The notes under the pieces: model-generated
Told to the model about the DNA's origin: nothing
The model's database searches: none
Seen by the model: the letters and a program-made list of their open reading frames with translations, nothing else
From: Octopus sinensis
Lineage: Eukaryota
Length of the DNA: 64,000 nucleotides
Assembly (NCBI RefSeq): GCF_006345805.1
Contig: NC_043015.1
Span: forward strand, 28,706,001 to 28,770,000
Direction of reading: 5' to 3'
Position numbers and translations under genes: made by a program
Shown here: positions 1-33,144 of the stretch, one piece after another
Position numbering within the stretch: the stretch's first letter is position 1
How the letters are laid out: the number at the start of each line of letters is the position of its first letter

Positions 1-16
1 GTTTTCCTTTAGTTGG

Positions 17-904
17 ATTGATTTCATTGGGAAGAATTACAAACATACTAAATGCTTTTCCTATATAAGGTAACTCAACAACTGTAGAGCTGTTGCTTAT
101 TTTTGTGCTAAAATTGTCTTTCTAGATGATGTTGCTTTTTATAGGAATATTTTATGCCATATTCTTTTCAAGTACACAGCATTAATAAGAACTAGAACCG
201 ACTGAGGTGTCAACTTCAAATTGTTAGGAGATCGGTAATTATGTTATTTGTGTTATTTTCAGCACAATCATTAAAACTGCTTTCAAATTTTGGTGCAAGG
301 CCAGCAATTTAATTGTAGGGGTAAATCAATTACAGCAACACAAGTGCTCAATTGGTACTTATTTTGTCAAACCCTAAAGGATGACAATGTCAACTCCAGA
401 ATGTCAAGATGGACAAATTGCTACTAAGTATTTTGCCCAGCATACTAACAATTCTAGCATCTTGTTGTCTTACAACATTGTAATTAATATTAATTCTTCC
501 TTTTCCAATATTTGTCATGAAGTCTACATTTTCAATATCTGAAAAGAAATTTTTTGCAATAATGTTCTTTTAGTCTCCTGAAATACGAAATTTTTCATTG
601 GCACTAAAACAATTGACTGAATTCAATGCAATAAGTTCATCTGAGTGTTTCAAAAGTGAAAAATATTCTTTAAAACCTCAAATTACAGGATCTGTATTTA
701 AAGTTATTTTCAAAATATTTTCAATTGTTTGGCAGAGTTTTGTCTTGCTCCAGAATAAACCATTGATAAAACGGTAGCAACATTGAATGGTGACATGAAA
801 ACATTTTCAACGGTTCCTGTAGACACAGCTTGAAAAAGACTCTTTGTACAATAATCAACTGAAGCAGCGAGGTTACCGAAGTCTTGTTTCTTTGCTTAGT
901 CCAT
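17..904 (-). pseudogene. Serpin pseudogene (older, inverted copy, truncated)
   Basis: Reverse complement aligns to the intact serpins from ATG (904-902). Codon 3 is TAA (MD*), with further in-frame stops, a 208-bp insertion (275-482), a ~50-bp deletion near 118, and homology ending at ~17 after ...LPNEIN. Confidence 0.9.
275..482 (-). mobile_element. Decayed SINE (family B-like) inserted in serpin pseudogene
   Basis: Interrupts the serpin alignment, is flanked by ATTAA at 270-274 and 483-487 (target duplication), and contains the GGTACTTATTTT...AGGATG core seen in family B. Confidence 0.7.
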
Positions 905-1175
905 ATTATTTCCGTGGCATCTAAAGAATATACAATATGAAGAGATGAAATGCAAAAGAATTTCCTGAAAAACAGTTCCTGTTCAATATTTCAAGAGAGT
1001 GTAAAACACACTAATGTGATCTAAGAATTCTGTATGAAAATGGTCTGAAATGATTTATGCAAAAACCCAAATTTTATTGTTTCCTAACTGTATTCTAAAT
1101 GTGATACATAATGTTCAAATCTATTTTGTAAATAATCACCGTATTTAAGCTAAAACATTTCAACATCATTTTAAG

Positions 1176-1432
1176 GTATGTGCCAAATGCCACATAAAGA
1201 ATGGAAGAAAGAAATGGTTATATTATTAAATCTTATAAATTTTTAATTATTTTAAAATCTATTTAAATCATATTGAGTGTTACCGTACAAAATATGTTCA
1301 TGTAAAAGTTAAATTTAAAGTTTGAACAGAAGAGATTTCAGACATTGCTTTCATAGATGTCTTCTACAATATACTGAAATGTTTGCCAGAATTTATTTTG
1401 TATATTTTCTTTTCATATTCTATATTCTCTAG
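1176..1432 (+). other. Putative 5' UTR intron of serpin (GTATGT...TTCTCTAG)
   Basis: A polypyrimidine tract plus AG sits 17 nt before the ATG, and an equivalent acceptor precedes every serpin copy. The donor AAG/GTATGT at 1176 is my guess. Confidence 0.45.
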
Positions 1433-1449
1433 ACACTATCGTATACGAT

Positions 1450-2603
1450 ATGGACTCAGCAGAGAAACAAGACATCGGTAACCTTGCTGCTTCAATTGAT
1501 TATTTTACAAACAGTCTTTATCAAGCTGTGGCTACAGGAACCAATGAAAATGTCTTCATGTCACCATTCAGTGTTGCTACTGTTTTATCAATGGTTTATT
1601 TGGGAGCAAGACAAAACTCTGCCAAACAGTTTGAAAATGTTTTGAAGATAACATCAAATCCAGATTCTGTAGCTTTGGCTTTTAAAGAATATTTTTCACT
1701 TTTGAAAAACTCAGATAAACTTGTCACATTCAATTCAGTGAATCGTTTGTATGCCAGTGAAAAATTCCCTATTTCAGAAGACTACAAGAACAACATGGTA
1801 AAATATTTCTTTTCAGATATTGAAAATGTAGACTTCATAACAAATGCTGAGAAGACAAGAATTACTATTAATGATTGGGTTAAGAATAACACAAATGACA
1901 AAATTACCGATCTGTTACCAAGTGGAAGTGTGACACCTCAGTCGGTTCTAGTTCTTATTAATGCTGTATACTTCAAAGGAATGTGAGCTGAAAAATTCCC
2001 AGAACAAGCAACATCATCTAGAAAGTTTTATTTAAGCTCTGACAAGACTGTATCTCATGATTTTATGTATATATCTGAAGATTTTAATACAAAAATACGC
2101 AACAACTATAAAGTTGTTGAGTTACTTTATATAGGAAAAGCATTTAGTATGTTTGTAATTCTTCCCAATGAAATCAATGGTCTTGCTGCTTTAGAGAAGG
2201 AGATTAATGCTCAATTTCTCAAAGACATTGTTGACAGAAAAGGATTTAAAATGATGCTTCTAGAATTAAATATGCCAAAATTTCATTAGAGAGTAGTTTT
2301 AAGTTGGGTGATGTTTTGAAAAAGCTTGGACTCCCTGATATTTTTGATCCTCTAAAAGCTGATTTATCTGGGATGACTGGTGGTGAGAAGAATATTTATG
2401 CCAGTGAAATGTTTCATAAAGCATTTGTTGATGTTAATGAAGAAGGAACGGAAGCTGCTGCTGCAAGTGGAATGGTGGTCTCAAATTATATGTCGAGAAT
2501 TGGGATGCAATTTGATGTCAATCACCCATTCACGTTTTTAGTTGTTGATGACCGAACTAAAATGATCCATTTCATTGGTAAAGTAACAGATCCTACAACA
2601 TGA
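1450..2603 (+). pseudogene. Serpin pseudogene (young; two lesions), RCL GMVVSNY-MS
   Basis: ORF pieces 1450-1986, 2065-2289 and 2304-2603 give a full serpin. W179 TGG is TGA at 1984-1986, and there is a 1-nt deletion near 2287 (TTTCATTAG vs TTTCGTTTAG). Hinge EEGTEAAAA and FDVNHPF are intact. Confidence 0.92.
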
Positions 2604-3149
2604 GATGATATTGCCCTGTCAAAGATTTCCCTCTTAGGGAATACTACATTGTATTATGTGGAGAATGTAACTGAACAAATTTATTTAGAATGGTTTTTTT
2701 AGTAAAATGACTTAGGACATCATAATTGTAACTGTGTAGAACCAAGGTCATATCTATTCAATGATATATTATAATACCACATTAATCTAAATCAATATTA
2801 TGAATTTGTATATGCCATACATTGACAGAAAATTTTGACACTTTTTAAAGTATCCTTTCTTTGCAAGTTTACTATTTTAACAATATATCTACTGTTGCCT
2901 GTAAACGTTATTTTCTGGTTGAATGAAGTGAAATCAATATTTGTATGCTTCATATTAATAAAGTATCTCAGTAAATATTCCATTATTTTGTATGTGTTCA
3001 TTGCATCTGGCTTTTATATTCTTTGTTTTAAATTTAGACATTCGAAATTTTTAAGCCCCCGTGTTCACCCTTCGTAATTATGTCTTGGATCTTGATAAAA
3101 TAATTACATTGTTTCAATAATTGTGGCATTACAAAACTTTTACACACCC

Positions 3150-3381
3150 GCATCGGTTGTCAAGCAATGCTAGGGGGACAAACACAGACACACAAACACA
3201 CACATACATATATATATACGACAGGCTTCTTTCAGTTTCCGTCTACCAAATCCACTCACACAGCATTGGTCGGCCCGGGGCTATAGCAGAAGACATTTGC
3301 CCAAGATGCCACACAGTGGGTTGAACCCGGAACCATGTGGTTGGTTAACAAGCTACTTACCACACAGCCACACCTACGCCT
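3150..3381 (-). mobile_element. SINE family A (tRNA-head composite with internal (TA)n(TG)n), partial
   Basis: Matches the ~430-480 bp element repeated about 20 times in the window (A-box TGGCTGTGTGGT, B-box GGTTCAGTCCC). Confidence 0.8.
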
Positions 3382-3563
3382 AATATTCCATTGTTCTCAG
3401 TTCATCTATTATCTGATAATTGTTTGGAGATTTTTAACATTCATAAATCCAACAAGTTATTTTATTCTTGTTTTGTTTTTCATCTAATTTTTTTGAAGCA
3501 GAATTACTCAACGTCCTTCATACTAACTCAACATTTTGAAATATTTATACAGAAATATATATA

Positions 3564-3940
3564 GGCGCAGAGTGGCTGTGTGGTAAGTAGCTTGCTAACC
3601 AAGCACATGGTTCCGGGTTGGGCAAGTGTCTTCTGCTATAGCCCCGGGCCGACCAATGCCTTGTGGGTGGATTTGGTAGACGGAAACTGAAAGAAGCCTG
3701 TCGTATATATGTATGTGTGTGTATATGTTTGTGTGTCTGTGTTTGTCCATCTAGCATTGCTTGACAACCGATGCTGGTGTGTTTACGTCCCCGTCACTTA
3801 GCGGTTCGGCAAAAAGAGACTGATAGAATAAGTACTGGGCATACAAAGAATAATTCCCGGGGTCGATTTGCTCGACTAAAGGCGGTGCTCCAGCATGGCC
3901 GCAGTCAAATGACTGAAACAAGTAAAAGAGTAAAAGAGAG
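3564..3940 (+). mobile_element. SINE family A
   Basis: Head GGCGCAGAGTGGCTGTGTGG through tail GAAACAAGTAAAAGAG. Confidence 0.85.
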
Positions 3941-4391
3941 AGTAACTCATAATAAAAATATGCATGCATGAGTGTGTGTGTGTGTGTGTGTACGTGTACA
4001 TGCATGCATGTATTTGTGTGTGTGTATATCTCTCCTATAACATCATGATTCTCTCTCACACACTGTCTTGCAACACAAAACACTTTAAGTCTTTGGTCCT
4101 CACGACACAGAACATTGACAAATTTTTTTCTTATCTGCTTCCCCTCTGACTAAGTAAACCTGTCTCCTATTTTCCCTTCTGGCGATCTGATACATTTCCC
4201 TGCTACCACCGTTCTTCCAGTCTTTCCATGCCTGTTTCTTTTCCCTAATGACCCTGTCAACTACATTGTTCCACCACCATGTTTCCTTGGGATGAAAGGG
4301 GACTTTGCACCATCTAGAGATCTAGTCAGTAGCCTCAAATGTTTATACAAATTTATTTTGTATATTTCTCTTCATATTCTATATTCTCCAG

Positions 4392-4567
4392 ATACGACTA
4401 TATACGAAGGAACGGAAGCTGCTGCTGCAAGTGGAATGGTGGTCTCAAATTATATGTCGATAATTGGGATGCAATTTGATGTCAATCACCCATTCACGTT
4501 TTTAGTTGTTGATGACCGAACTAAAATGATCCATTTCATTGGTAAAGTAACAAACCCCACGATATAG
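4392..4567 (+). pseudogene. Internally deleted serpin: acceptor/5' UTR fused directly to RCL-C-terminus
   Basis: TTCTCCAG-ATACGACTATATACGA joins AGGAACGGAAGCT (EGTEAAAASGMVVSNYMSIIGMQFDVNHPF...NPTI*). About 1 kb of CDS is missing, with GA microhomology at 4406-4407. Serpin 3' flank follows (4568-4740, 5900-6080, 6520-6710). Confidence 0.9.
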
Positions 4568-4782
4568 ATGATATTGTCTTGTCAAAGATTTTTCTCTTAT
4601 GGGATACTAGATTGTATTATGTAGACAACGTAACTCAGCAAATCCATTTACAATATTTTTGAGTAGAATGACTTAAACCATTATAGTTGTAATTGTGCAG
4701 AACCATGGACATATCTATGCAATGAAAGATTATAAGAATAGTTTTAATTTAGTTCTATATTTAAGAGATGAGGAATTAAATA

Positions 4783-4926
4783 CATTATTTACAATTGATG
4801 GATATTTGTCCTCATCTTGTTTGTTATTAACACAATGATTCGGCTGATATACCCTCCAGCCTTCATCAGGTGTCTTCGGGAAATTTCGAACCTGGGCTCT
4901 CATTCCTAAGGTATTTTGCGATTTTG

Positions 4927-4967
<41 letters not shown>

Positions 4968-5512
4968 GAGTGAGAGAGTAGTGCATGCCATCAAAGTGAT
5001 ACTAGTGTAGAATATACGAAGCCCAGTATACCCATCATGACTACCCGTCTGATAAGGGTACACTAGGCACATGCATCACAACCATATGTGTGCGACATGG
5101 TGATCTCATATCAAGATCAACAGCACATGACCTTGCAGGTGGGGCCCACTTAGAATTTTCTTCTGGTCGAGTAGCCCATCCAGCTCAAAAGGTCCCTGAA
5201 TAAGGGTTGTTTAAGGATGTTGAACGAAACACCCATGTTTCCAGAGGTGAATTATTCAAACCCTGAAGAGTCCCTCTCAACACATGGCTATGATGCTCCC
5301 CCACTACTTCTGCTCGTAATCAGAGATGCACATATCATCAGCCACTAAGGGACATGATCAACTGGTTGAGGTCAAACAACTGACAAGCAAATCTGTGGTA
5401 TTGAGCAGAATATTTTTGTAAGCCAATCTTTCATACCAAGACAAAACAATGTACATGATAACACTTCCAATCAGTTAAGATGAGAAGCCATGAGAGCCAC
5501 TGCCTGGTACTG

Positions 5513-5560
<48 letters not shown>

Positions 5561-5677
5561 GATTATTATTATTATTATTACTATTATTATTATCATTATT
5601 TAGGTCACTGCCTGGAATCGAACTCGGAATCTTGGAGTTAGTAGCCTGTGCTCTTAACGACTACGCCATATGCCCAC
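4783..5677 (-). mobile_element. tRNA(Ser)-headed SINE with hammerhead-like tail, copy 1 (split by 550-bp insert)
   Basis: Minus strand: GTGGGCATATGGCGTAGTCGTTAAG...CTACTAA...GTTCGATTCC head (5677-5602), then (AAT)n, then a body containing GACAC-CTGATGA-A-GGCTG...CAGCC-GAA (4874-4829). Confidence 0.6.
4965..5513. repeat. ~550-bp interspersed repeat bounded by (ATT)n; further copies at 31095-31555 and 31585-31668
   Basis: GAGTGAGAGAG...CATGCCATCAAAGTG...CAAGCAAATCTGTGGT is near-identical to the copy at 31.1 kb. Confidence 0.8.
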
Positions 5678-5889
5678 GTTCAATTCCAGGCAGTGGCCTG
5701 AATAATGATGATGATGATGATGATGATGATAACAACAACAGCAACATCGAAAAATACCTTAGGAATGAGAACCCAGGTTCGAAATTTCCCCAAGACACCT
5801 GATGAATGCTAGATAGAATATCAGCTGAAATGTGTTAACAACAAACAAGATGAGGACAAATTCTTGTCAATTGTAAATAACGTAAATAA
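5678..5889 (+). mobile_element. Same hammerhead-tailed SINE, copy 2 (head truncated), head-to-head with copy 1
   Basis: GTTCAATTCCAGGCAGTGGCCTG + (AAT/GAT/AAC)n + body with GACAC-CTGATGA...CAGC-T-GAAA-T-GTGTT (5794-5836); reverse complement of 4783-4925. Confidence 0.6.
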
Positions 5890-6110
5890 GTTTTAATTTT
5901 AATCAACATTATCAATTTGTATGTGTTGTACATTTACGGAAAGATATTACACTCTTGAACGTATCTTTTATTATTTTAACAATATACTTATTGTTGCCTG
6001 TAAACGTTATTTACTTATTGAATAAAGTGAAATCAATGCTTGTAAGTTTTATTTCTGTTTATATTAATAAAGCATCTCAGTAAATATTTAATCATTATTC
6101 TCTTTTTTCT

Positions 6111-6513
6111 CTCTTTTACTCTTTTACTTGTTTCAGTCATTTGACTGCGGCTATGCTGGAGCACCGCCTTTAGTCGAGCAAATCGACCCCAGGACTTATT
6201 CTTTGTAAGCCCAGTACTTATTCTATCGGTCTCTTTTGCCGGACCGCTAAGTGACGGGGACGTAAACACACCATGCTAGGGGGACAAACACACAGACACA
6301 CAAACACACACACACACACATACATACATATACATATATATACATATATACGACAGGCTTCTTTCAGTTTCCGTCTACCAAATCCACTCACAAGGTATTG
6401 GTCGGCCCGGGGCTATAGCAGAAGACACTTGCCCAAGATGCCAGCAGTGGGACTGAACCCGGAACCATGTGGCTGGTTAGCAAGCTACTTACCACACAGC
6501 CACTCCTGCGCCT
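6111..6513 (-). mobile_element. SINE family A
   Basis: Full reverse-complement copy inserted into the 3' flank of the deleted serpin. Confidence 0.85.
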
Positions 6514-7059
6514 ATGTATGTGTTAATTGCATCTGGCTTTTATTTTCTTTTAAATATAGACATTTGAAATTCTTGAGCCCTCATATTAACCTCAGGGATT
6601 TTAGTCTTGGATCTTGATTGAAGAATTCCATTGATTCTGTAATTTTGATGTTACAAAACTTTTGAAAAGTTAACAGCCAACACACTATATACATATAAAT
6701 ACCATGCATATGTCTAATTAATGCACTGTCTAATTAATAATTATTTCAAATTTTTGCCACAAGTGCAGCTTGAGGAGTCGGTATCAAGTCGATTACACTG
6801 ACCCCAGTGTACCACCGGTATTTATTTTATTGACCCCCAACAGAATGAAATGCAAAGTCGACCTCGGTGGAATTAGAACTCAGAATGTAGTGACAGGCGA
6901 AATACCAAACATTTCCCCTGGCACGTTAATGATTCTGCTAGCTCACTGCCTTAATTGCCGAATTAGTAATGTAGCAAAGTTGGCATTCTCAAAATAACAG
7001 AGAGAATGATTAATATATATTCTGGAGTGTTCTGTCTATAAGTGGAACAAGAATCATCA

Positions 7060-7420
7060 TCATCATCGTTTAACGTCCACTTTCCATGCTAGCATGGATT
7101 GGACAATTTGACTGAGGTCTGGTGAACCAGATGGCTGCACGAGGCTCCAATCTGATCTGCCAAAGTTTCTACAGCTGGATGCCCTTCCTAATGCCAACCA
7201 CTCCGAGAGTGTAGTGGGTACTCTTACATGCCACTGGCACAAGGGCCAGTCAAGTGGTACTGGCAACGGCCATGCTCAAATAGTGTTTTTTACGTGCCAC
7301 CTACACAGGTGCCAGTCCAGCAGCACTGGTAACGACCTTGCTTGAATGTTTTTTCATGTGCCAGTAAGGGCAACGCTGGCAACAATCACACTCAAAGGGT
7401 GCTTTTTACGTGCCGCCGGA
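7060..7420 (-). mobile_element. SINE family C ((GAT)n tail, internal ~58-bp VNTR)
   Basis: (CAT)n-CGTTTAACGTCC...GCTAGCATGG...GATGCCCTTCCTAATGCCAACCACTCC motif shared by about 12 copies in the window. Confidence 0.75.
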
Positions 7421-7769
7421 ACGGAAGGCAGTTTGCTGCTCTGGCAACGATCACACTTGTGTTCATTAATTATTTACTTAATTATTTTCTTAATTAATTA
7501 TTTACATGTGTTCATTAATTATTTACTTATTTCATGCATATATTGCTCCATATTATAAAAGAAGTTCGGGCGAGTATTAGTTAATGATTTTCCTTGCTAG
7601 TTGAAAAAAATATCTTTATTTATTACTAGCATTATGACCCATTATTGCCGGGTCATAGTGCTAGTGCATGTATATATGTGTATATATGTGTACATATTAC
7701 ATGTACATCTATATATATACATCTACACATAAAATACAAAATACAAAGTTATATCTTGATATCGCTAGT

Positions 7770-8340
7770 GATAACAACATTCAAAATATATAACAGACTG
7801 GAATTGTAGGCTTGTCTCTTGCAATTTCGATCAATTGTATCTTGTCCTCCCTCTTGTATAGCAGTGTGGCTACAATCCAGCCTACCTCTACTTCTGGGGG
7901 ACATTTTTAATTTTCATCTGGGACGTCCTACGTCCCAGATATAAAGGTAAAATAAAATATTTCCACTTTGCAAGGTTCGAGTCAAGTACTCCCTTGCACG
8001 CTCCGTTGACTCGAACCTTGCTTCTATTGTTGTGAATTTACTGCCTCTGGTTAGATATCTTTCATAGTCGCACCAAGACACTTTACGATGGTGCTTTCCT
8101 CCAGGTGTTCAAATCTTTTTTTTCTCTACATTGTATACTTTATAGACAATAGTCTTTTCTTTAATTTAATTTTTTATTTCGTTTGGTGGTGTTATCCTAG
8201 ATTCACCATCTTTGTCTGTGATCAATCCGAAATAGGTTTGTATTTCTTCCATTTTAATTTTAATGAGGTCGCGCCCGCCGACGGCTGCAGCGAAATTCAT
8301 TTTTGGACTTTCTTCTATCGAAGGCATTCTAACAAAAATG
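7770..8340 (-). pseudogene. Possible decayed LINE ORF1-like remnant
   Basis: Broken minus-strand reading MPSIEESPKMNFAAAVGGRDLIKI...KCPPEVEVGWIVATLL; resemblance to LINE ORF1 is from recall only. Confidence 0.3.
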
Positions 8341-9016
8341 CTTCCGTATAAACAGTGAAAATATTGTCAATTTCCCCAAACAGGGACACAATTCAATTTT
8401 TAAACAATAACCAAAGCCCCTTTTCCCAAAGAAGGAGGGTTACAGTTTACAATTATTTAACAAATGTAACACAACAACGTTTCCCTTACTAGGAACCAAC
8501 AAACGTGATAACAATAAACAATAATAATAATAATAACAACAATCCTTACGGTGAATCAAAAAGCAGTACGCAGTTGAAGCTATGGTCTTTTATGTATAAA
8601 AAAATAAACCAACAGCAGTACTCAGTAGTAGTGGCTGTTCGAGAAAACAGACATTACATGCAGCCAAACTTAATGCTAGCTAATTAGCAAATAATCTAAT
8701 GTAAAAGCCGTGGTAAATGGTATGTGCACAGCTCCATCTGGGCTATTCCAATACTGCACACTAATTTTATTTTTGAGTTATTCCCATTCATGTGAAATCA
8801 CTTATTCAAGTTCAAGTCATTGATGCAGTTTTATACCAACTGCTATTTTTACTTTTGTTATGTTACGATTATATTATACTTTAGTTTGATTGTAATTATT
8901 ACTTACTGCATATAATTCAATTGTTATTATTATCTCTAACTTTTATTGTTAAAGTGAAAGTATCTGACATAAAATAGAGAAATGTTTTTGTTTCACTTTT
9001 AACACGTAACACTGAA

Positions 9017-9498
9017 ATAGTGGAGAAGATATGATATTGCTATGGGCTCGCTCTAGGCAAGAAGTTGAACATTTTTTTGCCCATGAAACTACATGGACCC
9101 TAAGTAAGGCATGTGTATAATTTGAATGAAATTGGTTATGTACTTTTCAAGTTTAGGGAATCATAGTGGAGAAGATATGATATTGCTATGGGCTCGCCCG
9201 AGGCAAGAAGTTGAACATTTTTTTGCCCATTAAAAAAACATGGACCCTGATTAAGGCATGTGTAAAATTTGAATGAAATTGGTTATGTAGTTCTCAAGTT
9301 TTAGGGAATCATAGTGGAGAACATATGATATTGCTATGGGCTCGCCCAAGGCAAGAAGTTGAACATTTTTTTTGCCCATTAAAAAACATGGACCCTAAGT
9401 AAGGCATGTGTAAAATTTGAATGAAATTGGTTATGTAGTTCTCAACTTTTAGGGAAACACAGACAGACACACGTTCTCAGTTTTATATAGAGAGAGAT
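9017..9498 (-). mobile_element. Helitron-like 5' end with 3 x ~147-bp tandem minisatellite
   Basis: Units ATAGTGGAGAAGATATGATATTGCTATGGG start at 9017, 9163 and 9311. Minus-strand end TCTCTCTCTATATAAAACTG...GTCTGTCTGTG matches the other Helitron-like 5' ends. Confidence 0.6.
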
Positions 9499-10784
9499 TA
9501 TTATTTCTGGTTCATCACACATTATACGCCGAGATCGTTAATTAGTCTACCGTACACATTCTGGAGTCAACTGCAGTCTACGTGGTCGTCGGCAGAACTT
9601 CTTTTCTACTTTATGCTGCAGTTAACTTCTATTTTGCGCTATAGAAATTTTAAAACAAAAATGTTTCTCCCATTTTAACTCTATCAGCAAGGAACGAAAC
9701 TCGACATACTAATTACTTCACATTCATTGCCACGTCGCTCGAACTTTCCTCGCAAAGTCTCTTCATTATCGACGACATTCCATAGTTTTGTCATGCATTA
9801 TTTGAAAGTCAAATCACGGCAAAACTTCACCATGTAGCAGATTAAATTCTTTTTTTTTTTTCACTTCGTCTTTTTAGATAAAATAAGACAAGTTATTCAC
9901 ATTAACCGAATGTTTTGTATGAAATAAAATAATGGAAATTATTTATTATTAGCGTGTTCATTTTCGAAAACTTTCATTCTTTAAAAAACTTGGCTGACAT
10001 CAAAATCTAGATATGAGTCAAAGAGAAAACCCCTACGTGGTCAATAGACCAGCCAAATCTTCCTAAAATCATATCCTACCTTGAAAAATAAGAAAACGGT
10101 TAATTTCTGTATCAATCTAATAGGAGTGTCTGGGATAGCTATTTCTTTATTACCCACAAGGGGCTAAACACAGAGGGGACAAACAAGGACAGACATAGGT
10201 ATTCAGTCCATTACATCGACACCAGTGCGTAACTGGTACTTAATTTATCGACCCCGAAAGGATAAAAGGCAAAGTCGACCTTGGCGGAATTTGAACCCAG
10301 AACGTATCGCTGACGAAATACCGCTAAGCATTTCGCCCGTCGTGCTAACTTTTCTGCCAGCGAATCGGTTACTCCCTAGTTTTGTGGTGTTGGCAGTCGG
10401 TGTTATAGGATGTGATGAGCTAAGTGGTGCACTGGTGATAGATGAAGTGGGCGGAAGACTGCAGAATGCATGCGCAGCAGGAGTTTGTCAAGCAGGACAG
10501 TTCCAACATAGACGGGAAAGCGATAAGACGTGTAGAATTCGTGAAAGAGACCGCTGATTTCGAAGAGGTAAGGCCTTTTGTATTTCTTTCTCCCGTTGCT
10601 TCTTTTTCTGTTGTCTTCTTCATCCATCACACTACAAGTTTAATACCCGGCCACCAGAACAAGAAGAAAAAAGTTAACGAATCTGGAAAACAAAATTTGC
10701 GTAAACGAAACGGAGAGGAGGAGAGGACTTTCGGAAAATTCACACAATCCGATTTTTTCCCTCATAACTTTCAGGAGCCAATGG

Positions 10785-12542: not shown

Positions 12543-13465
12543 AATGCATGGGTATAGATGTTGAATTTGTTCCAATAACTTTCCAAAGATTTCGTCCTTA
12601 AATTCATAATGCCACATGAATTCAATGAGATGGGATTGAAGTAAATTTCGGGCTGTTCCATTTTCTCTTTTGTTACGATTCTTTACATGCTTCCATAAAC
12701 ATTCTATGTGGTTGGTTGTGGCAAATGTTACCGGATCAACAAAATTTATTGCCGGTGGCACATAAAATACACCAATCTGACCGTGGCCGTTGCCAGCCTC
12801 GCCTGGCACCTGTGCAGGTGGCACGTAAAAAGCACCCACTACACTCACGGAGTGGTTGGCGTTAGGAAGGGCATCCAGCTGTAGAAACATTGCCAGATTA
12901 GACTGGAGCCTGGTGCAGCCTTCTGGCTTCCCAGAACCCCGGTCGAACCGTCCAACCCATGCTAGCATGGAGAACGGACGTTAAACGATGATGATGATGA
13001 TGATGATGATTCACAGTCAAATGCCTATATCCTAGCTGATTGAGCGTATTATACGAACGCCAGAGGTTAGAAATTACAGTTGTACCAGGCTATATACGCT
13101 CTTGTATAATTTCTAAAAGAGTGTCCGCAGTCCGATCTTCCACTGCCACCAAATACCATCTTCTAGTATCCCTTTCCAAAGCACCAAAAACCCACTGCGT
13201 TTTAACCTGATGGCCAACATTATATTTTCTTCTAACAAACGCTCTTTCATCTATCTCTACAATTCAGTTTGGCCCTCCGAGCTTAATGTTTTGTGCAACA
13301 TAATATTCTGCACATATATCACAGCAAAAATTTCTCCAATCTATACGGCATTCCTGGGCTATTCCCTTTGCTAAATCTTCTTTTGCCCAATAATATAAAA
13401 TATCAATAATCTGCTCGCACTTTAACTTACTATTCTCTAGAAATGTTCCTTGAAGGATGTAGCCA
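12543..13465 (-). mobile_element. Merlin (IS1595/ISXO2-like DDE) transposase remnant, copy 1
   Basis: Minus strand: ...KLGGPN*IVEIDERAFVRRKYNVG...WVFGALERDTRR...TLLEIIQERI*PGTTVISNLWRSY...GYRHLTVNH[SINE]INFVDPVTFATTNHIECLWKHVK...HLIEFMW; two stops and a SINE C insertion at 12749-13011. Confidence 0.88.
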
Positions 13466-14036
13466 AAAAAAATTTGTCGGATGGCGTGATATGGTCATGT
13501 GGAAGGCCTTGCAGAAAAATGGTTTCAATTAGAAAAGGAGGATCTATTTCTTTTGAACGGCAGTTTTCAACACAATTTCTGGCTCTCTTGAGAAAATTGT
13601 AATTTGTAAGTTTAACGTAGTTTAATTTTTCAGATTTTAACCAATCAATGGCCTCTACTCAACACTGTTCATGAATTATTTCACCATGGTTAACAGCAGA
13701 TACAACCTGCGAGAACCTTCTGTACCAAGTAACCGGCTCTGCATAGTAGCCACAGCTTCACGCATGACATGTGCCTCAACTGGCTCTGCATTGCATTCTT
13801 CTAACGTCCTATTATAGACTCTTTCAATGCTCTGTACTTATCGCACACGCATACATCCACGTTTCTGCACACACATTATGTATACATGACGGCCTGTCTA
13901 TTATTATATATACATGACACACACACACAGACACACATGTTAACCTATCAATAAAATCTTTCTCTTAAACATTCTACTGGTTGTGTCTCTCTTTTCCTGC
14001 TGGCATTCATACTCATTCATCCTTTTTCCTATTTAT

Positions 14037-14421
14037 TGTAATCGACCGTGCGGCGTACTAAAGGAGACATTCTCGTCACCTCTCCTTCACACGGTCATGT
14101 GGTGTGTGCACGATTTGAATATAAAGGCACCTACCTTCTCTTCCTCGTGATGGAGACCCTTCTGTGGTAGCTAATCCTTCGACACAGCTCCAACCCGAAC
14201 ACTAAAGATAGCAGCTGCTCACCCAGACCCTTCGCCACCATCCTCACACGTCTTGTCATTTGGACGACCCACGTTGGAAAGGCCCAATTGACTGCTGCCT
14301 GCGCACGCCTGACAGCAGCCCTTTCCGGTTGCCCCAGCTTCCGGTCAACGCACCCAGCTGCTGACGTCATCCCACAGGTCATTCTACAAACTAAATATTA
14401 ACCATTGAGTCTAGGTTTACA
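14037..14421 (+). mobile_element. Solo-LTR-like segment (copy at 21684-22068)
   Basis: TGTAA...TTACA termini, 385 bp, GC-richer than flanks, AATATAAA at ~14119; no target duplication seen. Confidence 0.35.
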
Positions 14422-14967
14422 GGATCCGGTCTAGCTTGGTATTACACTAATTAGTTCAACATCACCTCCAGGCACATTAAGGCCTTTTTTGAGGATGTCA
14501 TTTTGTTGCAAGTATTTGACCAGGCTCTCAGCAGGTGGAGTATATCATTGTACTTGATACCTTATCTTACCATATATGCAAAAAATGAAAACTAAACCTG
14601 CTCCATTCAAATTTGTCTCTGAAATGCAAACATGGTTAAGTTCCAACATCATCTTATAAATGAAACTTTTAAGATATGTGCCAAATATCAGATAAATATT
14701 GGAGAAAAAAATGGTTATATTAATTAATCATATAAATTTTTAATTATTTTAAAAACTGTTTAAAACACATTAACTCTGTGTTATGTTAAAAATATGTTCA
14801 TGTAAAAGTTAAAATTAGAGTTTGATCAGAAGAGATTTCAGACTTTGCTTTTATAGATGTCTCTAATTACAGTAATGTCTAATAAAATATTTTGAAATGT
14901 TTGCAAGAATTTATTCTGTATATTTTCTCTTCATATTCTATATTCTCCAGATACTATCGTATACAAT

Positions 14968-16128
14968 ATGGACTCAGCAAAGAAACAAGACATCAGTAAC
15001 CTTGCTGCTTCAATTGATTATTTTACAAACAGTCTTTATCAAGCTGTGGCTACAGGAATCAATGAAAATGTCTTCATGTCACCATTCAGTGTTGCTACTG
15101 TTTTATCAATGGTTTATTTGGGAGCAAGACAAAACTCTGCCAAACAGTTTGAAAATGTTTTGAAGATAACATCAAATCCAGATTCTGTAGCTTTAGCTTT
15201 TAAAGAATATTTTTCACTTTTGAAAAACTCAGATAAACGCGTCACATCCAATTTAGTGAATCGTTTGTGTGCCAATGAAAAATTCCCTATTTCAGAAGAC
15301 TACAAGAACAACATGGTAAAATATTTCTTTTCAGATATTGAAAATGTAGACTTTATAACAAATGCTGAGAAGACAAGAATAACTATTAATGATTGGGTTA
15401 AGAATACCACAAATAACAAAATTACTGATCTGTTACCAAGTGGAAGTTTGACACCTCAATCGGTTCTAGTTCTTATTAATGCTGTATACTTCAAAGGAAC
15501 GTGGGCTGAAATATTCTCAGAAAGAGCAACATCATCTAGAAAGTTTTATTTAAGCTCTGACAAGACTGTATCTCATGATTTTATGTATCTATCTGAAGGT
15601 TTTAATTCAAAAATAAGTGACAACTATAAAGTGGTTGAGTTACGTTATATAGGGAAAGCATTTAGTATGTTTGTAATTCTTCCCAATGAAATCAATGGTC
15701 TTGCTGCTTTAGAGAAGGAGATCAATGCTCAATTTCTCAAAGATATTATAGACAGAAAAGGATTTGAAGGGTTGTTTCTAGAATTACGTATGCCAAAATT
15801 TCGTTTAGAGAGTAGTTTTCAGTTAGGTGAAGTTTTGATAAAGCTTGGACTCTCTGATATTTTTGATCCTCAAAAAGCTGATTTATCTGGAATGACTGGT
15901 GGTGAGAAGAATATTTATGCCAGTGAAATGTTTCATAAAGCATTTGTTGAAGTTAATGAAGAAGGGACGGAAGCTGCAGCTGCAACTGGAATGTTCGCGA
16001 TGGATTTGTCAGGCTATTTTGGTATGCCTATGGATTTTGATGTCAATCACCCATTCACATTTTTAATTGTTGACAACCAAACTAAAATGATCCATTTCAT
16101 TGGTAAAGTAACAAATCCTACAACATGA
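14968..16128 (+). CDS. Intracellular serpin (clade B/LEI-like), RCL TGMFAMDL-SG, predicted P1 Leu
   Basis: 386-aa intact single-exon ORF; NVFMSPFS, LINAVYFKGTW, MPKF, EEGTEAAAAT hinge and FDVNHPF signature; no signal peptide; acceptor AG at 14949-14950. Confidence 0.96.
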   Translation: MDSAKKQDISNLAASIDYFTNSLYQAVATGINENVFMSPFSVATVLSMVYLGARQNSAKQFENVLKITSNPDSVALAFKEYFSLLKNSDKRVTSNLVNRLCANEKFPISEDYKNNMVKYFFSDIENVDFITNAEKTRITINDWVKNTTNNKITDLLPSGSLTPQSVLVLINAVYFKGTWAEIFSERATSSRKFYLSSDKTVSHDFMYLSEGFNSKISDNYKVVELRYIGKAFSMFVILPNEINGLAALEKEINAQFLKDIIDRKGFEGLFLELRMPKFRLESSFQLGEVLIKLGLSDIFDPQKADLSGMTGGEKNIYASEMFHKAFVEVNEEGTEAAAATGMFAMDLSGYFGMPMDFDVNHPFTFLIVDNQTKMIHFIGKVTNPTT

Positions 16129-17480: not shown

Positions 17481-18237
17481 CCCTAGAAGGAAAGGTATGC
17501 ATAAGTGGATTGGCTACATCCCATGTTGAGGTCATGGCTTATGGTCTTACTTGGCCTCCCAGATCTTCTCATGCACAGCATACTTAAATATATATTTCTT
17601 TACTACCCACAAGGGGCTAAACACAGAATGGACAAACAAGGACAGACAAAGGGATTAAGTCGATTACATCGACCCCAGTGCGTAACTGGTACTTAATTTA
17701 TCGACCACGAAAGGATGAAAGGCAAACTCGACCATGGCGGAATTTGAACTCACAACGTATCGCTGACGAAATACCGCTAAGCATTTCGCCCGTCGTGCTA
17801 ACTTTTCTGCCAGCGAATCGGTTACTACCTAGTTTTGTGGTGTTGGCAGTCGGTGTTATAGGATGTGATGAGCTAAGTGGTGCACTGGTGATAGATGAAG
17901 TGGGCGGAAGACTGCAGAATGCATGCGCAGCAGGAGTTTGTCAAGCAGGACAGTTCCAACATAGACGGGAAAGCGTTAAGACGTGTAGAATTCGTGAAAG
18001 AGACCGCTGATTTCGAAGAGGTAAGGCCTTTTGTATTTCTTTCTCCCGTTGCTTCTTTTTCTGTTGTCTTCTTCATCCATCACACTACAAGTTTAATACC
18101 TGGCCACCAGAACAAGAAGAAAAAAGTTAACGAATCTGGAAAACAAAATTTGCGTAAACGAAACGGAGAGGAGGAGAGGACTTTCGGAAAATTCACACAA
18201 TCCGATTTTTTCCCTCATAACTTTCAGGAGCCAATGG

Positions 18238-22615: not shown

Positions 22616-23779
22616 ATGGACTCAGCAAAGAAACAAGACATCAGTAACCTTGCCGCTTCAATTGATTATTTTACAAACAGTCTTTATCAAGCTGTGGCTA
22701 CAGGAATCAATGAAAATGTCTTCATGTCACCATTCAGTGTTGCTACTGTTTTATCAATGGTTTATTTGGGAGCAAGACAAAACTCTTCCAAACAGTTTGA
22801 AAATGTTTTGAAGATAACATCAAATCCAGATTCTGTAGCTTTAGCTTTTAAAGAATATTTTTCACTTTTGAAAAACTCAGATAAACTCGTCACATCCAAT
22901 TTAGTGAATCGTTTGTGTGCCAATGAAAAATTCCCTATTTCAGAAGACTACAAGAACAACATGGTAAAATATTTCTTTTCAGATATTGAAAATGTAGACT
23001 TTATAACAAATGCTGAGAAGACAAGAATAACTATTAATGATTGGGTTAAGAATAACACAAATAACAAAATTACTGATCTGTTACCAAGTGGAAGTTTGAC
23101 ACCTCAATCGGTTCTAGTTCTTATTAATGCTGTATACTTCAAAGGAACGTGGGCTGAAACATTCGGAAAAAAAGCAACATCATCTAGAAAGTTTTATTTA
23201 AGCTCTGACAAGACTGTATCTCATGATTTTATGTATCTATCTGAAGGTTTTAATACAAAAATAAGTGACAACTATAAAGTGGTTGAGTTACCTTATATAG
23301 GGAAAGCATTTAGTATGTTTGTAATTCTTCCCAATGAAATCAATGGTCTTGCTGCTTTAGAGAAGGAGATTAATGCTCAATTTCTCAAAGACATTGTTGA
23401 CAGAAAAGGATTTCAAATGATGTGTCTAAAATTACATATGCCAAAATTTTGTTTAGAGAGTAGTTTTCAGTTGGGTGATGTTTTGAAAAAGCTTGGACTC
23501 TCTGATATTTTTGATCCTCTAAAAGCTGATTTATCTGGAATGACTGGTGCTGAGAAGAATATTTATGCCAGTGAAATGTTTCATAAAGCATTTGTTGATG
23601 TTAATGAAGAAGGAACGGAAGCTGCAGCTGCAACTGGAATAGTCATGACCTTCGCGTCAGCACAAATTTTTATAAATCGTATAGATTTTGATGTCAATCA
23701 TCCATTCACATTTTTAATTGTTGACAACCGAACTAAAATGATCCATTTCATTGGTAAAGTAACAAATCCTTCAACATAA
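22616..23779 (+). CDS. Intracellular serpin, RCL TGIVMTFA-SA, predicted P1 Ala
   Basis: 387-aa intact ORF with all serpin motifs; acceptor AG at 22597-22598. Confidence 0.96.
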   Translation: MDSAKKQDISNLAASIDYFTNSLYQAVATGINENVFMSPFSVATVLSMVYLGARQNSSKQFENVLKITSNPDSVALAFKEYFSLLKNSDKLVTSNLVNRLCANEKFPISEDYKNNMVKYFFSDIENVDFITNAEKTRITINDWVKNNTNNKITDLLPSGSLTPQSVLVLINAVYFKGTWAETFGKKATSSRKFYLSSDKTVSHDFMYLSEGFNTKISDNYKVVELPYIGKAFSMFVILPNEINGLAALEKEINAQFLKDIVDRKGFQMMCLKLHMPKFCLESSFQLGDVLKKLGLSDIFDPLKADLSGMTGAEKNIYASEMFHKAFVDVNEEGTEAAAATGIVMTFASAQIFINRIDFDVNHPFTFLIVDNRTKMIHFIGKVTNPST

Positions 23780-29267: not shown

Positions 29268-30422
29268 TTATGTTTTAGGATTTGTTACTTTACCAATGAA
29301 ATGGATCATTTTAGTTCGGTTATCAACAATCAAAAATGTGAATGGGTGATTGACATAAAATTCCATCCCAATTTGTACTGACATTGCCATCGCGACCATT
29401 CCACTTGCAGCAGCAGCTTCCGTTCCTTCTTCATTAACATTAACAAATGCTTTATGAAACATTTCACTGGCATAAATATTCTTCTCACCACCAGTCATTC
29501 CAGATAAATCAGCTTTTTGAGGATCAAAAATATCAGAGAGTCCAAGCTTTTTCAAAACTTCACCCAACTGAAAACAACTCTCTAAACGAAATTTTGGCAT
29601 ATGTAATTCTAGATACATCATTTCAAATCCTTTTCTGTTTATAATATCTTTGAGAAATTGAGCATTAATCTCCTTCTCTAAAGCAGCAAGACCATTGATT
29701 TCATTGGGAAGAATTACAAACATACTAAATGCTTTTCCAATATAAGGTAACTCAACGACTTTATAGTTGTCGCTTATTTTGGTATTAAAATCTTCAGATT
29801 TATACATAAAATCATGAGTTACAGTCTTGTCAGAGCTTAAATAAAACTTTCTAGATTTTGTTGCATGTTCTGGGAATTTTTTAGCCCACGTTCCTTTAAA
29901 GTACACAGCATTAATAAGAACTAGAATTGATTGAGGTGTCAAACTTCCACTTGGTAACAGATCAGTAATTTTGTTATTTGTGTTATTCTTAACCCAATCA
30001 TTAATAGTTCTTCTTGTCTTCTCAGCATTTATTATGAAGTCTACATTTTCAATATCTGAAAAGAAATATTTTACCATGTTGTTCTTGTAGTCTTCAGAAA
30101 AAGGGAATATTTCACTGGCATACAAACGATTCACTGAATTGAATGTGACAAGTTTATCTGAGTTTTTCAAAAGTGAAAAATATTCTTTAAAAGCCAAAGC
30201 TACAGAATCTGGATTTGATGTTATCTTCAAAACATTTTCAAACTGTTTGGCAGAGTTTTGTCTTGCTCCCAAATAAACCATTGATAAAACTGTAGCAACA
30301 CTTAATGGTGACATGAAGACATTTTCATTGATTCTTGTAGCCACAGCTTGATAAAGACTGTTTGCAAAATAATCAATTGAAGCAGCAAGGTTACTGATGG
30401 CTTGTTTCTTTGCTGAGTCCAT
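29268..30422 (-). CDS. Intracellular serpin, RCL SGMVAMAM-SV, predicted P1 Met
   Basis: 384-aa intact ORF on the minus strand with all serpin motifs; acceptor TTCTCCAG just upstream of ATG; conserved 3' flank at 28680-29267. Confidence 0.96.
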   Translation of the reverse strand: MDSAKKQAISNLAASIDYFANSLYQAVATRINENVFMSPLSVATVLSMVYLGARQNSAKQFENVLKITSNPDSVALAFKEYFSLLKNSDKLVTFNSVNRLYASEIFPFSEDYKNNMVKYFFSDIENVDFIINAEKTRRTINDWVKNNTNNKITDLLPSGSLTPQSILVLINAVYFKGTWAKKFPEHATKSRKFYLSSDKTVTHDFMYKSEDFNTKISDNYKVVELPYIGKAFSMFVILPNEINGLAALEKEINAQFLKDIINRKGFEMMYLELHMPKFRLESCFQLGEVLKKLGLSDIFDPQKADLSGMTGGEKNIYASEMFHKAFVNVNEEGTEAAAASGMVAMAMSVQIGMEFYVNHPFTFLIVDNRTKMIHFIGKVTNPKT

Positions 30423-32174: not shown

Positions 32175-33144
32175 TACACACACACACACACACGTAGATA
32201 CATATATACACACAATGCCATATGTGTACATTTTCAAGTGTGTCTTTATATTTAAGGCGACACCTGAAAATTACAGGAAGCAGCATTTCACAAGAAATAT
32301 AAAGGCAATATACTCTTTCTTGCGAGACATTGAATTTTTTGGCATTCAGGTGAGAAATCTGATAGCCCCAGCTGACACACCTTGAGATAAAAGAAAGAGA
32401 GAGCAGATGAAGGTAGGAGTTGAATGATGCGGAGTAAAAGAAATTGCAGTAGGAAATTTAAATATCAAATTGTGTTTTTGTTTATCCGCTGTAAGAGAGA
32501 AAGAAATATAAAAAGACGGAAGTGTATATACCTGAGGCTGTTTGTTGTGAGACACAAGATAAGGCAATCAAGAATATAAGACAACTGATTACTTCTGCCA
32601 TGTCTGGATCGCTGTTAAAACTGTTAGAATGATAACCATGTAAATGGAAGATAATTTAGTCTTGGTATTACTAATTATATGAAATAAAACTAAATATGAT
32701 CTTCTTTTAATTAAAACCAGAAAGCAGCAATCAAAATTATATACGAAAACAGCTGTTTGTTGCTGCTATCTATTTCTGGAAGAAAAAAACAACCTTTAAG
32801 AACTTGACTAAGAGCTACTTTTAAAGCCAATGTGAAAAAATACAAAATGACCGAATGGACAAACTGTTTCTTCATAAAAATAGGAGAGGCAGTGGCTGTT
32901 ACTGCTGCTTCTGCTGCTGCTGCTGCTGCTGCTGGTGGTGATACTGTTGGTGATGATGACAATGACAACGATGATGATGAAAATGATAAACAGACATTAT
33001 GACAACAATGCTGACAAAAAGAAATGAAGTACTAAGACTAATTTATGGCAAGAAACATTTCGTTGTAATAATTTATTTATAGTCTTAACGAACTAAAGTA
33101 TTTTAGTTGAAAGGAAACATAAGAAGTCTGTGTTTTTATATATC

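What the first reader, a model, noticed from the sequence alone, without database searches (positions are those of the whole stretch)
2441..4567. Direct footprint of an RCL swap by gene conversion between an old deleted paralog and the 1450 copy
Seen: tract 4407-4551 matches 2442-2587 with one substitution noticed in ~145 nt (TCGATA vs TCGAGA), and both share private characters (TFLVVDDRTK vs TFLIVDN[Q/R]TK in the three intact genes). Yet the 3' flank of the fragment (4568-4740) is clearly diverged (roughly 20% by eye), while the 1450 flank groups tightly with the intact genes. Inference: the 1450 gene received its RCL-C-terminal tract from the older lineage, so dead copies could act as a donor library of bait loops, loosely like pseudogene-templated diversification of avian Ig.
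Basis: partly seen in the sequence, partly recalled or inferred. Interest (0 to 1): 0.75.

Follow-up and report, generated by a model that had tools for sequence, protein, structure and literature searches.

The report
Gene-conversion patch in an octopus serpin pseudogene
In a tandem cluster of octopus protease-inhibitor (serpin) genes, a dead gene copy carries a short bait-loop patch copied from a different, still-living gene lineage; this is a clean but ordinary case of gene conversion, not evidence that dead copies act as a loop library.

Summary
Window 2442-2587 and 4406-4551 differ at 1 of 146 bases, while the 3' flanks differ by 19.7% (105/532).

The window is Octopus sinensis chromosome CM016877.1, a large serpin array.

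- **The fragment at 4406 is not an old paralog.** It belongs to a segmental duplicate (window 3381-9308+) that is about 98% identical to the locus of an intact gene I call G6. G6 encodes XP_029647969.1, which carries the VVSNYMSR loop. The fragment has a 996-bp in-frame deletion. A full-length version also exists in the same assembly.
- **The 1450 copy is the mosaic.** It matches G6 at every site from 2373 to 2588. About 25 diagnostic sites (2467-2550) separate this patch from the eight other copies. On both sides the copy reverts to background type. A permutation test gives P<1/5000.
- **Polarity.** The O. bimaculoides ortholog of G6 has the same loop type and the same flank type, so the patch went into the 1450 copy.
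- **The 1450 copy is dead.** It has an in-frame TGA at 1984-1986 and a 1-bp frameshift near 2284. O. vulgaris shares both lesions, the patch and the fragment's deletion, so all predate that species split and none is a misassembly.

The donor cannot be assigned between G6 and the neighbouring copy. The "donor library" idea is unsupported.

The parts
1..905 (-). F: old serpin pseudogene. It lies head-to-head with copy A, carries an insertion and runs off the window start.
   Evidence: Alignment and blastn. The same head-to-head F|gene unit recurs beside G2-G5 in L001.
1433..2603 (+). A: the serpin body exon called the '1450 copy'. ATG at 1450, stop at 2601-2603, YAG acceptor at 1430-1432. It is a pseudogene.
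   Evidence: ORFs broken; alignment; Pfam Serpin on both pieces; acceptor context.
1984..1986 (+). In-frame TGA in A where all other copies have TGG.
   Evidence: The same stop is present in O. vulgaris A'.
2283..2286 (+). 1-bp deletion (frameshift) in A: TTTCATTAG against TTTCGTTTAG in the other copies.
   Evidence: The same frameshift is present in O. vulgaris A', and the P0139 gene model reads the shifted frame.
2373..2588 (+). Run of complete identity between A and the intact gene G6 (216 nt). The conversion tract is at least 2467-2550 (84 nt) and at most 2354-2590 (237 nt). It encodes RCL positions P8 onward, the VVSNYMSR loop and FDVNHPFTFLVVDDRTKMIHFIGKVT.
   Evidence: Mismatch list; diagnostic-site table; permutation test; trees; eight-sequence comparison.
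2591..3141 (+). 3' flank of A. It is background (C/D) type, not G6 type.
   Evidence: 2.7% from C, 19.7% from B; A groups with C in an NJ tree.
3381..9308 (+). Segmental duplicate of the G6 locus, about 98% identical to L001 40722-46920. A SINE-like insertion at 3555-3943 is absent from G6.
   Evidence: 4406-9000 against L001 42353-46920, 50 mismatches in 4601. (99.3% to O. vulgaris L007 over window 17-9308).
4334..4405 (+). B, 5' part: polypyrimidine-CAG acceptor and the first 15 nt of a G6-type body exon, encoding (D)TTIY.
4406..4567 (+). B, 3' part: hinge, RCL and C-terminus through stop TAG (4565-4567). It is joined to the 5' part by a 996-bp (332-codon) in-frame deletion with 2-nt GA microhomology. 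The T at 4461 is private to this copy.
   Evidence: Pfam Serpin positions 320-370.
4552..6665 (+). 3' flank of B, G6-type, interrupted by an inverted-repeat element (4739-5889) and a SINE-like element (6093-6511). Both are also present at the G6 locus.
14968..16128 (+). C: intact serpin body exon, 386 aa.
   Evidence: (P0014).
22616..23779 (+). D: intact serpin body exon, 387 aa.
29268..30422 (-). E: intact serpin body exon, 384 aa. Its signal-peptide leader exon lies at 32533-32601 (-).
   Evidence: (P0148, 410 aa).

Best explanation
**Setting.** The window is part of a large tandem array of serpin 'body' exons in Octopus sinensis. Each body has its own hypervariable reactive-centre loop (RCL).

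**The event.** Copy A (1450-2603) is structurally a background-type unit: it pairs head-to-head with an F pseudogene and has a C/D-type flank. It received a short interlocus gene-conversion tract, at least 84 and at most 237 bp (2467-2550 up to 2354-2590). The tract came from the G6 lineage, which is the conserved, signal-peptide-bearing serpin whose predicted P1 is Tyr (loop VVSNYMSR).

**What the fragment is.** The fragment at 4334-4567 (B) is a young duplicate of the G6 locus lying 2-3 kb downstream of A. It later lost 332 codons through an in-frame deletion with 2-nt microhomology.

**Donor.** The donor was either this neighbouring copy, most plausibly while still full length, or G6 itself. 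The two are ancestrally identical in the tract.

**Timing and consequence.** The conversion, B's deletion and A's two disabling lesions all predate the O. vulgaris / O. sinensis split. Today both A and B are dead, so the event is a neutral footprint of the frequent conversion that shapes this array.

**Shown.** The mosaic, its limits, its statistical support, its polarity, its presence in a second species, B's derivation from a G6-type locus, and A's lesions.

**Inferred.** The repair mechanism (double-strand-break repair or synthesis-dependent strand annealing), the donor's identity, the order of conversion relative to A's death, and P1 = Tyr by hinge counting.
For: **The mosaic in A.**
- A and B differ at 1/146 in the tract against 19.7% in the flank (Fisher p = 4e-11).
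- A and G6 have no mismatch from 2373 to 2588. About 25 sites between 2467 and 2550 have A = G6 against 7-8 of the 8 other copies. A reverts to background at 2353 and 2591.
- In a GENECONV-like test, A and G6 share a run of 47 consecutive polymorphic sites. The global permutation P is <1/5000, the strongest fragment in the family.
- In NJ trees the tract groups (A,B,G6) at 99.5% and (A,B,G6,Ob2) at 100%. The 3' flank groups (B,G6) and (B,G6,Ob2) at 100%, with A beside C.
- A sliding-window scan puts A nearest G6 only in 2350-2599.

**Polarity.**
- O. bimaculoides P0017 (Ob2) has the loop VVTNYMLRIGMQ, the NPTI tail, the leader exon and a G6-type 3' flank.

**B derives from a G6-type locus.**
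- Window 3381-9000 is about 98% identical to L001 40722-46920, including shared transposon insertions and minus 996 bp.
- A full-length B'' lies next to A'' in L008.

**A second assembly agrees.**
- O. vulgaris L007 is 99.3% identical to window 17-9308. It has the same stop, frameshift, tract and deletion junction.

**A's unit is background type.**
- A's unit (17-3141) is collinear at 92-93% with the F|G units of G2-G5.
Against: - The donor cannot be identified. G6, G6 of O. vulgaris, B, B of O. vulgaris and B'' are identical in the tract except for singletons.
- Polarity rests on one outgroup locus.
- The O. sinensis assembly around the cluster is suspect. The window's content occurs twice as a 100% identical inverted copy, and a third 99.5% version exists. 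'Paralog' and 'allele' therefore cannot always be told apart.
- L001 is only 97.8% identical to the O. vulgaris region, against 99.3% for the window. This is unexplained.
- The deleted-B lineage has 5 fixed differences from G6 in 180 nt of flank but none in 146 nt of tract. This may mean further homogenisation that I did not resolve.
Confidence: 0.85

Rival explanations
1. The already-deleted, dead fragment B was the donor, and dead copies serve as a reservoir of bait loops for other genes, as in pseudogene-templated diversification.
For: - B is the nearest carrier of the tract. It is 2-3 kb downstream of A in direct orientation in both species.
- The ancestral B (as seen in O. vulgaris) is identical to A in the tract.
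Against: - An intact gene (G6 = P0018) carries the identical tract.
- A full-length version of B exists, so the donor need not have been dead.
- If B was already deleted, it offers at most 25 nt of homology 5' of the first diagnostic site (2442-2466).
- The recipient A is dead in two species.
- The only loop unique to dead copies (F-type) is not found in any live gene retrieved.
- Only one such tract was found.
Confidence: 0.07
2. Reverse polarity. The tract arose in A and was copied into the G6 lineage, and so into G6, B and B''.
For: The three derived sites behind the VVDD residues (2534, 2541, 2550) are absent from O. bimaculoides Ob2. They therefore arose after that split, and their place of origin is not directly observed.
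Against: - Ob2 already has the same loop type joined to a G6-type flank, the NPTI tail and the leader exon.
- This direction would need transfer into a lineage that already had this loop, or several transfers.
- A is a pseudogene.
Confidence: 0.04
3. A is originally a G6-type gene. Its 5' body and 3' flank were overwritten by two long conversions from background copies, leaving the tract as a remnant.
For: The array shows other mosaic fragments and species-wise clustering of the body exons, so long conversions do occur.
Against: - A's whole 3.1-kb unit, including the head-to-head F pseudogene, is collinear with the G2-G5 units. The G6 locus lacks that structure.
- This needs two long events instead of one short one.
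Confidence: 0.03
4. Assembly or polishing artefact. One copy's loop was overwritten by reads from the other.
For: The O. sinensis assembly contains a perfect inverted duplicate of this region and an allele-like third version.
Against: The independent O. vulgaris assembly (GCA_951406725.2) has the same A tract, the same B junction and the same flanks at 99.3% identity.
Confidence: 0.01

Closest known systems
Interlocus gene conversion with reactive-centre hypervariability in tandem serpin clusters: mouse Serpina1/Serpina3 (Spi-1/Spi-2); Hill & Hastie 1987; Ohta 1994; reviewed by Ohta 2010 (PMC3966226)
   Same: - A tandem serpin array in which each copy has its own RCL.
- The gene bodies are homogenised; here they cluster by species.
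- Short conversion tracts are detectable.
- Conversion at the reactive centre has long been proposed as a source of variation.
   Different: - Here the transferred piece is the RCL itself and the recipient is a pseudogene, so no selected product is visible.
- The organism is a cephalopod.
- I did not find the array described in the papers I searched (titles and abstracts only).
Pseudogene-templated diversification of avian immunoglobulin V genes
   Same: A short templated patch is copied from a neighbouring homologous copy into another copy.
   Different: - The avian system is somatic and programmed, uses many pseudogene donors and has a functional recipient.
- Here there is a single germline event, fixed in two species.
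- The donor lineage is alive and the recipient is dead.
Mutually exclusive RCL cassette exons of insect serpins: Manduca serpin-1 exon 9 (Jiang et al. 1994, cited in PMC3966226)
   Same: Fragment B starts at the hinge and encodes only the RCL plus C-terminus. It is preceded by a good splice acceptor and is in frame with the leader.
   Different: - B is a deletion derivative of a whole body exon. Its 5' end is the start of the body exon, and a full-length version exists in L008.
- The octopus array alternates whole bodies, not RCL cassettes.
Clade B / leukocyte elastase inhibitor-like serpins (Pfam PF00079); best solved relatives are antithrombin and SERPINB3/B4
   Same: - Full-length Serpin domain.
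- Inhibitory-type hinge EEGTEAAAAS.
   Different: - The proteins are secreted via a separate leader exon.
- P1 = Tyr for the G6-type loop is inferred only by counting from the hinge.

Membership tests
Serpin (PF00079) | Full-length match to the Serpin domain profile above the gathering score | tested here: met
   C scores 363.9 bits and P0018 (G6) 368.6 bits. The A pieces score 149.5 and 105.1 bits. The B fragment scores 45.2 bits over profile positions 320-370.
Serpin (PF00079) | Inhibitory-type hinge (P17 Glu, small residues at P12-P9) followed by an exposed RCL | tested here: met
   EEGTEAAAA(S/T) is present in all copies. It aligns to the antithrombin hinge. Inhibitory activity itself is not testable here.
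Interlocus (ectopic) gene conversion tract | A near-identical segment between paralogs, bounded on both sides by diverged sequence | tested here: met
   A and G6 have 0 mismatches in 2373-2588. A is background type at 2353 and from 2591 onward. A and B differ at 1/146 in the tract against 19.7% in the flank.
Interlocus (ectopic) gene conversion tract | Phylogenetic incongruence between tract and flanks, significant against permutation | tested here: met
   NJ bootstrap trees. A permutation test of polymorphic sites gives global P <1/5000.
Interlocus (ectopic) gene conversion tract | Polarity established with an outgroup or ortholog | tested here: met
   O. bimaculoides Ob2 has the same loop type together with a G6-type flank. 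This rests on a single outgroup locus.
Interlocus (ectopic) gene conversion tract | Identified donor copy | tested here: inconclusive
   G6, B and B'' are ancestrally identical in the tract.
Pseudogene-templated diversification (avian Ig type) | The donors are non-functional copies that hold sequence absent from functional genes | tested here: not met
   The identical tract is carried by the intact gene G6 (P0018) and by its O. vulgaris counterpart.
Pseudogene-templated diversification (avian Ig type) | The recipient is a functional, expressed gene | tested here: not met
   A has an in-frame stop and a frameshift upstream of the tract, shared by two species.
Pseudogene-templated diversification (avian Ig type) | Repeated use of many donors | tested here: not met
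   Only one RCL-bearing tract was found. The F-type dead loop has no live counterpart among the retrieved genes. The sample is limited to the loci fetched.
Mutually exclusive RCL cassette exon (insect serpin-1 type) | A stand-alone exon that encodes only the RCL and C-terminus and arose as a duplicated cassette sharing common upstream coding exons | tested here: not met
   B's 5' end is the acceptor plus the first 15 nt of a whole body exon. A 996-bp deletion relative to G6 and to B'' explains its shape.

The most novel reading that the evidence does not exclude
The octopus serpin array may work as a 'one leader, many bodies' locus. A single signal-peptide exon would be spliced to any one of a dozen complete serpin body exons. 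Short conversion tracts would move bait loops between bodies, including through silent ones. Fragment B keeps its acceptor and reading frame, so it could even yield a secreted 52-residue RCL/C-terminal peptide. On this reading, A and B would be intermediates in an ongoing loop-shuffling system rather than debris.
Probability: 0.08. Interest if true: 0.55.

Novelty: new member of a known kind. Interest (0 to 1): 0.22.

Why it matters
- It is a well-resolved example of a short interlocus conversion tract: both edges are bracketed, polarity is set by an outgroup, and a second species confirms it. It lies in a cephalopod serpin array that I did not find described in the papers I searched.
- It shows that RCLs can be moved between paralogs as a unit.
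- Both partners visible in the window are dead, so the event has no demonstrable functional consequence and does not support a pseudogene 'loop library'.
- The broader array is probably more interesting than the footprint itself. It has a shared leader exon with alternative whole bodies. Its bodies evolve in concert, while the loop and 3' flank stay orthologous between species.

Tried and rejected
- **Direction from within the window.** I tried to decide direction from non-RCL sites of the tract. With 6-7 differences in about 110 nt, similar to C against E, the test has too little power. I dropped it in favour of external loci.
- **A-private substitution rate.** I used it to date the tract. 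The expectation was 1.8 substitutions and 0 were observed (P = 0.17), which is uninformative.
- **O. vulgaris P0020 locus (L005).** I tested it as a possible pre-conversion ortholog of A. It is only 92% identical and is not the ortholog. The true ortholog is in L007.
- **First protein search.** The search with A's 99-aa C-terminal ORF missed P0018. The full-length query found it.
- **Leader exon for the + strand copies.** No leader exon for A-D was found in the window; only E's leader is there.
- **Rejected readings.**
  - RCL cassette exon: B has a full-length version.
  - Single unequal crossover: there are two breakpoints.
  - Misassembly: O. vulgaris agrees.
- **Files.** L002, L003 and L006 were not written to the script folder. 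I compared L002 and L003 with DNA alignment only and did not analyse L006.
Full report
**What is in the window.**
The sequence is eukaryotic, AT-rich and full of SINE-like repeats and microsatellites. It holds six serpin copies.

| Copy | Coordinates (strand) | State |
|---|---|---|
| F | 1-905 (-) | old pseudogene, head-to-head with A |
| A | 1450-2603 (+) | pseudogene |
| B | 4334-4567 (+) | fragment |
| C | 14968-16128 (+) | intact |
| D | 22616-23779 (+) | intact |
| E | 29268-30422 (-) | intact |

A is not intact. It has TGA where every other copy has TGG (1984-1986), and a 1-bp deletion near 2284. Protein searches place the window on Octopus sinensis chromosome CM016877.1 of assembly GCA_006345805.1.

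**Checking the observation.**
- A 2442-2587 and B 4406-4551 differ at one base in 146 (A 2497 G, B 4461 T).
- B's 3' flank continues through two transposon insertions. It differs from A's flank at 105/532 positions (19.7%).
- A's flank differs from those of C, D and E by 2.7%, 4.5% and 11.4%.
- The contrast between tract and flank is highly significant (Fisher p = 4e-11).

**What the fragment really is.**
A full-length query found an intact O. sinensis protein, P0018. It is XP_029647969.1, 'leukocyte elastase inhibitor isoform X3', 413 aa. It carries exactly the VVSNYMSR loop, the FLVVDD residues and B's NPTI tail.

Its locus, L001, lies on the same chromosome and holds seven more body exons, which I call G1-G7. 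P0018's body is G6. Three points tie B to it.
- Window 3381-9000 is about 98% identical to L001 40722-46920, with 50 mismatches in 4601 nt. The match includes the same inverted-repeat element and the same SINE in the 3' flank.
- The window differs by one extra SINE (3555-3943) and by a deletion of 996 bp, which is 332 codons, in frame, with a 2-nt GA microhomology.
- A further O. sinensis locus, L008, has the same F-A block at 99.5% identity, followed by a full-length G6-type body (B'') in B's position.

B is therefore a young, internally deleted duplicate of a living gene's locus, not an old paralog. Its flank looks 20% diverged from A's because it is G6-type.

**The mosaic is A.**
- Against G6, A has no mismatch from 2373 to 2588.
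- At about 25 sites between 2467 and 2550, A and G6 share a base that 7 or all 8 of the other copies lack.
- At 2353 and from 2591 onward, A carries the background state and G6 its own.
- The tract is therefore 84-237 bp long.
- In a GENECONV-style permutation of polymorphic sites, the A-G6 fragment is a run of 47 sites. It is the strongest in the family, with global P <1/5000.
- NJ trees put (A,B,G6) together in the tract at 99.5% bootstrap. In the 3' flank they put (B,G6) together at 100%, with A beside C.
- A sliding-window scan shows A nearest G6 only in 2350-2599.
- A's 3.1-kb unit, with its F partner, is collinear with the G2-G5 units. The G6-type piece is an insert, not a remnant.

**Polarity.**
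The O. bimaculoides protein P0017 has the leader peptide, the loop VVTNYMLRIGMQ and the NPTI tail. Its locus, L004 (body Ob2), has a G6-type 3' flank. It groups with G6 and B in both the tract and the flank at 100%. The loop and the G6-type flank have therefore belonged together since before that species split, and A is the recipient. The three substitutions behind the VVDD residues arose later in the G6 lineage and travelled to A with the loop.

**Age, and the misassembly question.**
The O. vulgaris read-through gene model P0139 strings the bodies G5'-G6'-X'-A'-B'-next on one strand. Its DNA, L007, matches window 17-9308 at 99.3%.
- A' differs from A at 3 of 1427 bases. It has the same TGA, the same frameshift and the same tract.
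- B' has the same deletion junction, and G where window B has its private T.
- The conversion, the deletion and A's death therefore all predate the O. vulgaris / O. sinensis split. The tract is not an assembly artefact.

**The donor.**
Eight sequences were compared in the tract: three versions of A, G6, G6 of O. vulgaris, B, B of O. vulgaris and B''. They are identical except for three singletons. G6 and the neighbouring copy therefore cannot be told apart as donor. Proximity favours the neighbour, at 3 kb against about 16 kb in O. vulgaris. Homology favours a full-length template, because a deleted B offers at most 25 nt upstream of the first diagnostic site. This step is inference.

**The 'donor library' idea.**
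It fails on its defining points.
- The loop exists in a living gene.
- The recipient is dead.
- Only one such transfer is seen.
- The one loop confined to dead copies (F-type TAVIREG*YFHQHT*) has no live counterpart among the genes retrieved.

Gene conversion together with selection at serpin reactive centres is a long-standing idea (Hill & Hastie 1987; Ohta 1994; reviewed in PMC3966226). This is a new, clean example of a known kind.

**Context worth noting.**
- **Splicing.** Each body exon is preceded by a polypyrimidine-YAG acceptor 9-17 nt upstream of its ATG. A single leader exon (L001 10001-10070, GT donor) is annotated as spliced alternatively to G1, G2 or G6. E has its own leader at window 32533-32601 (-).
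- **Evolution.** The body exons cluster by species, while the loop and 3' flank keep orthology. This indicates concerted evolution of the body. Several other conversion-like fragments are significant.

**Caveats.**
- The O. sinensis assembly holds a perfect inverted duplicate of part of this window and the allele-like L008 block.
- L001 is only 97.8% identical to O. vulgaris.
- Copy number, and whether copies are paralogs or alleles, are therefore uncertain.

Noticed in passing
window 12968-15500; L002 and L003 (CM016877.1 28549139-28554299 reversed and 28718968-28724128 forward): Two places about 170 kb apart and in opposite orientation on the O. sinensis chromosome are both 100% identical to the window over 2533 nt, non-coding DNA included. 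This is either a very recent large palindrome or a false inverted duplication in the assembly.
   Followed up: partly
L008 13953-20885 (CM016877.1 28606003-28635048, reversed) against window 17-6367: This is a third F-A-B block. F''-A'' is 99.5% identical to the window, but the B position holds a full-length G6-type body that is 99.1% identical to the G6 locus. That body has a 1-bp frameshift after GMQ (NCBI model XP_036367082.1). It could be the undeleted allele assembled as a separate locus.
   Followed up: partly
L001 10001-10070; window 32533-32601 (-); acceptors at window 1430-1432, 4388-4390, 14948-14950 and 22596-22598: A single signal-peptide leader exon is annotated as spliced alternatively to three different complete serpin body exons (G1, G2, G6). 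Every body exon in the array keeps a polypyrimidine-YAG acceptor just upstream of its ATG. This is alternative splicing of whole bodies, unlike the RCL-only cassette exons of insect serpins.
   Followed up: partly
window 4334-4567: B's 996-bp deletion is in frame and keeps the splice acceptor. If spliced to a leader, B would encode a secreted peptide of about 52 residues: DTTIY plus the hinge, RCL and C-terminal strands. The O. vulgaris model P0139 includes this piece as an exon.
   Followed up: no
window 2576-2584 and the same position in every body exon (CATTTCATTGGTAAAGTAACA): A conserved GGTAAAG lies about 20 nt before each stop codon. The O. vulgaris read-through models (P0138, P0139) use it as a splice donor to join one serpin body to the next (...KMIHFI|DTTIYD...). 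This is probably an annotation artefact, but the site is conserved in all copies.
   Followed up: no
alignment of A, C, D, E, G1-G6, Ob2 and Ob3 (window 1450-2353 equivalents): The two O. bimaculoides bodies cluster together, apart from all ten O. sinensis bodies, in the coding body. In the RCL tract and 3' flank, Ob2 instead groups with G6 and B. This suggests concerted evolution of the body with the loop and flank escaping it. Other significant conversion-like fragments are G1-G6 (2258-2466 equivalents, P = 0.001) and A-E (1621-1757, P = 0.013).
   Followed up: partly
window 2372 and 2589: The identity run between A and G6 is ended on both sides by substitutions private to A (G where every other copy has A). 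It is not ended by G6-versus-background diagnostic sites. 2589 changes Asn to Asp in the KVTNPT tail. These could be chance, or mutations made during the repair event.
   Followed up: no
window 4552-4738 against L001 42499-42685 and L008: The deleted-B lineage (window plus O. vulgaris) has 5 fixed differences from G6 and B'' in 180 nt of flank, but none in the 146-nt tract. About 4 would be expected. This hints at later homogenisation or past constraint.
   Followed up: no
L001 34001-49409 against L007 2283-17652: The O. sinensis G4-G6 region is only 97.8% identical to the O. vulgaris region. G6 against G6' has 38 differences in 1417 nt. The window's F-A-B block, by contrast, is 99.3% identical between species. 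Possible causes are unequal orthology, deep haplotypes or conversion.
   Followed up: no
L001 28670-29252 (-); window F (1-905, -): The F-type pseudogenes carry their own dead loop (EEGTEATAVIREG*YFHQHT*) together with a G6-like NPTI tail. No live gene with this loop was retrieved.
   Followed up: partly
window 3142-3386 and 3555-3943; 4739-5889; 10135-10434 against 17588-17887: An inverted pair of SINE-like elements lies between A and B. A 1.15-kb element with terminal inverted repeats and microsatellites lies in B's flank and is shared with the G6 locus. C and D sit in a 7.65-kb tandem repeat unit.
   Followed up: no
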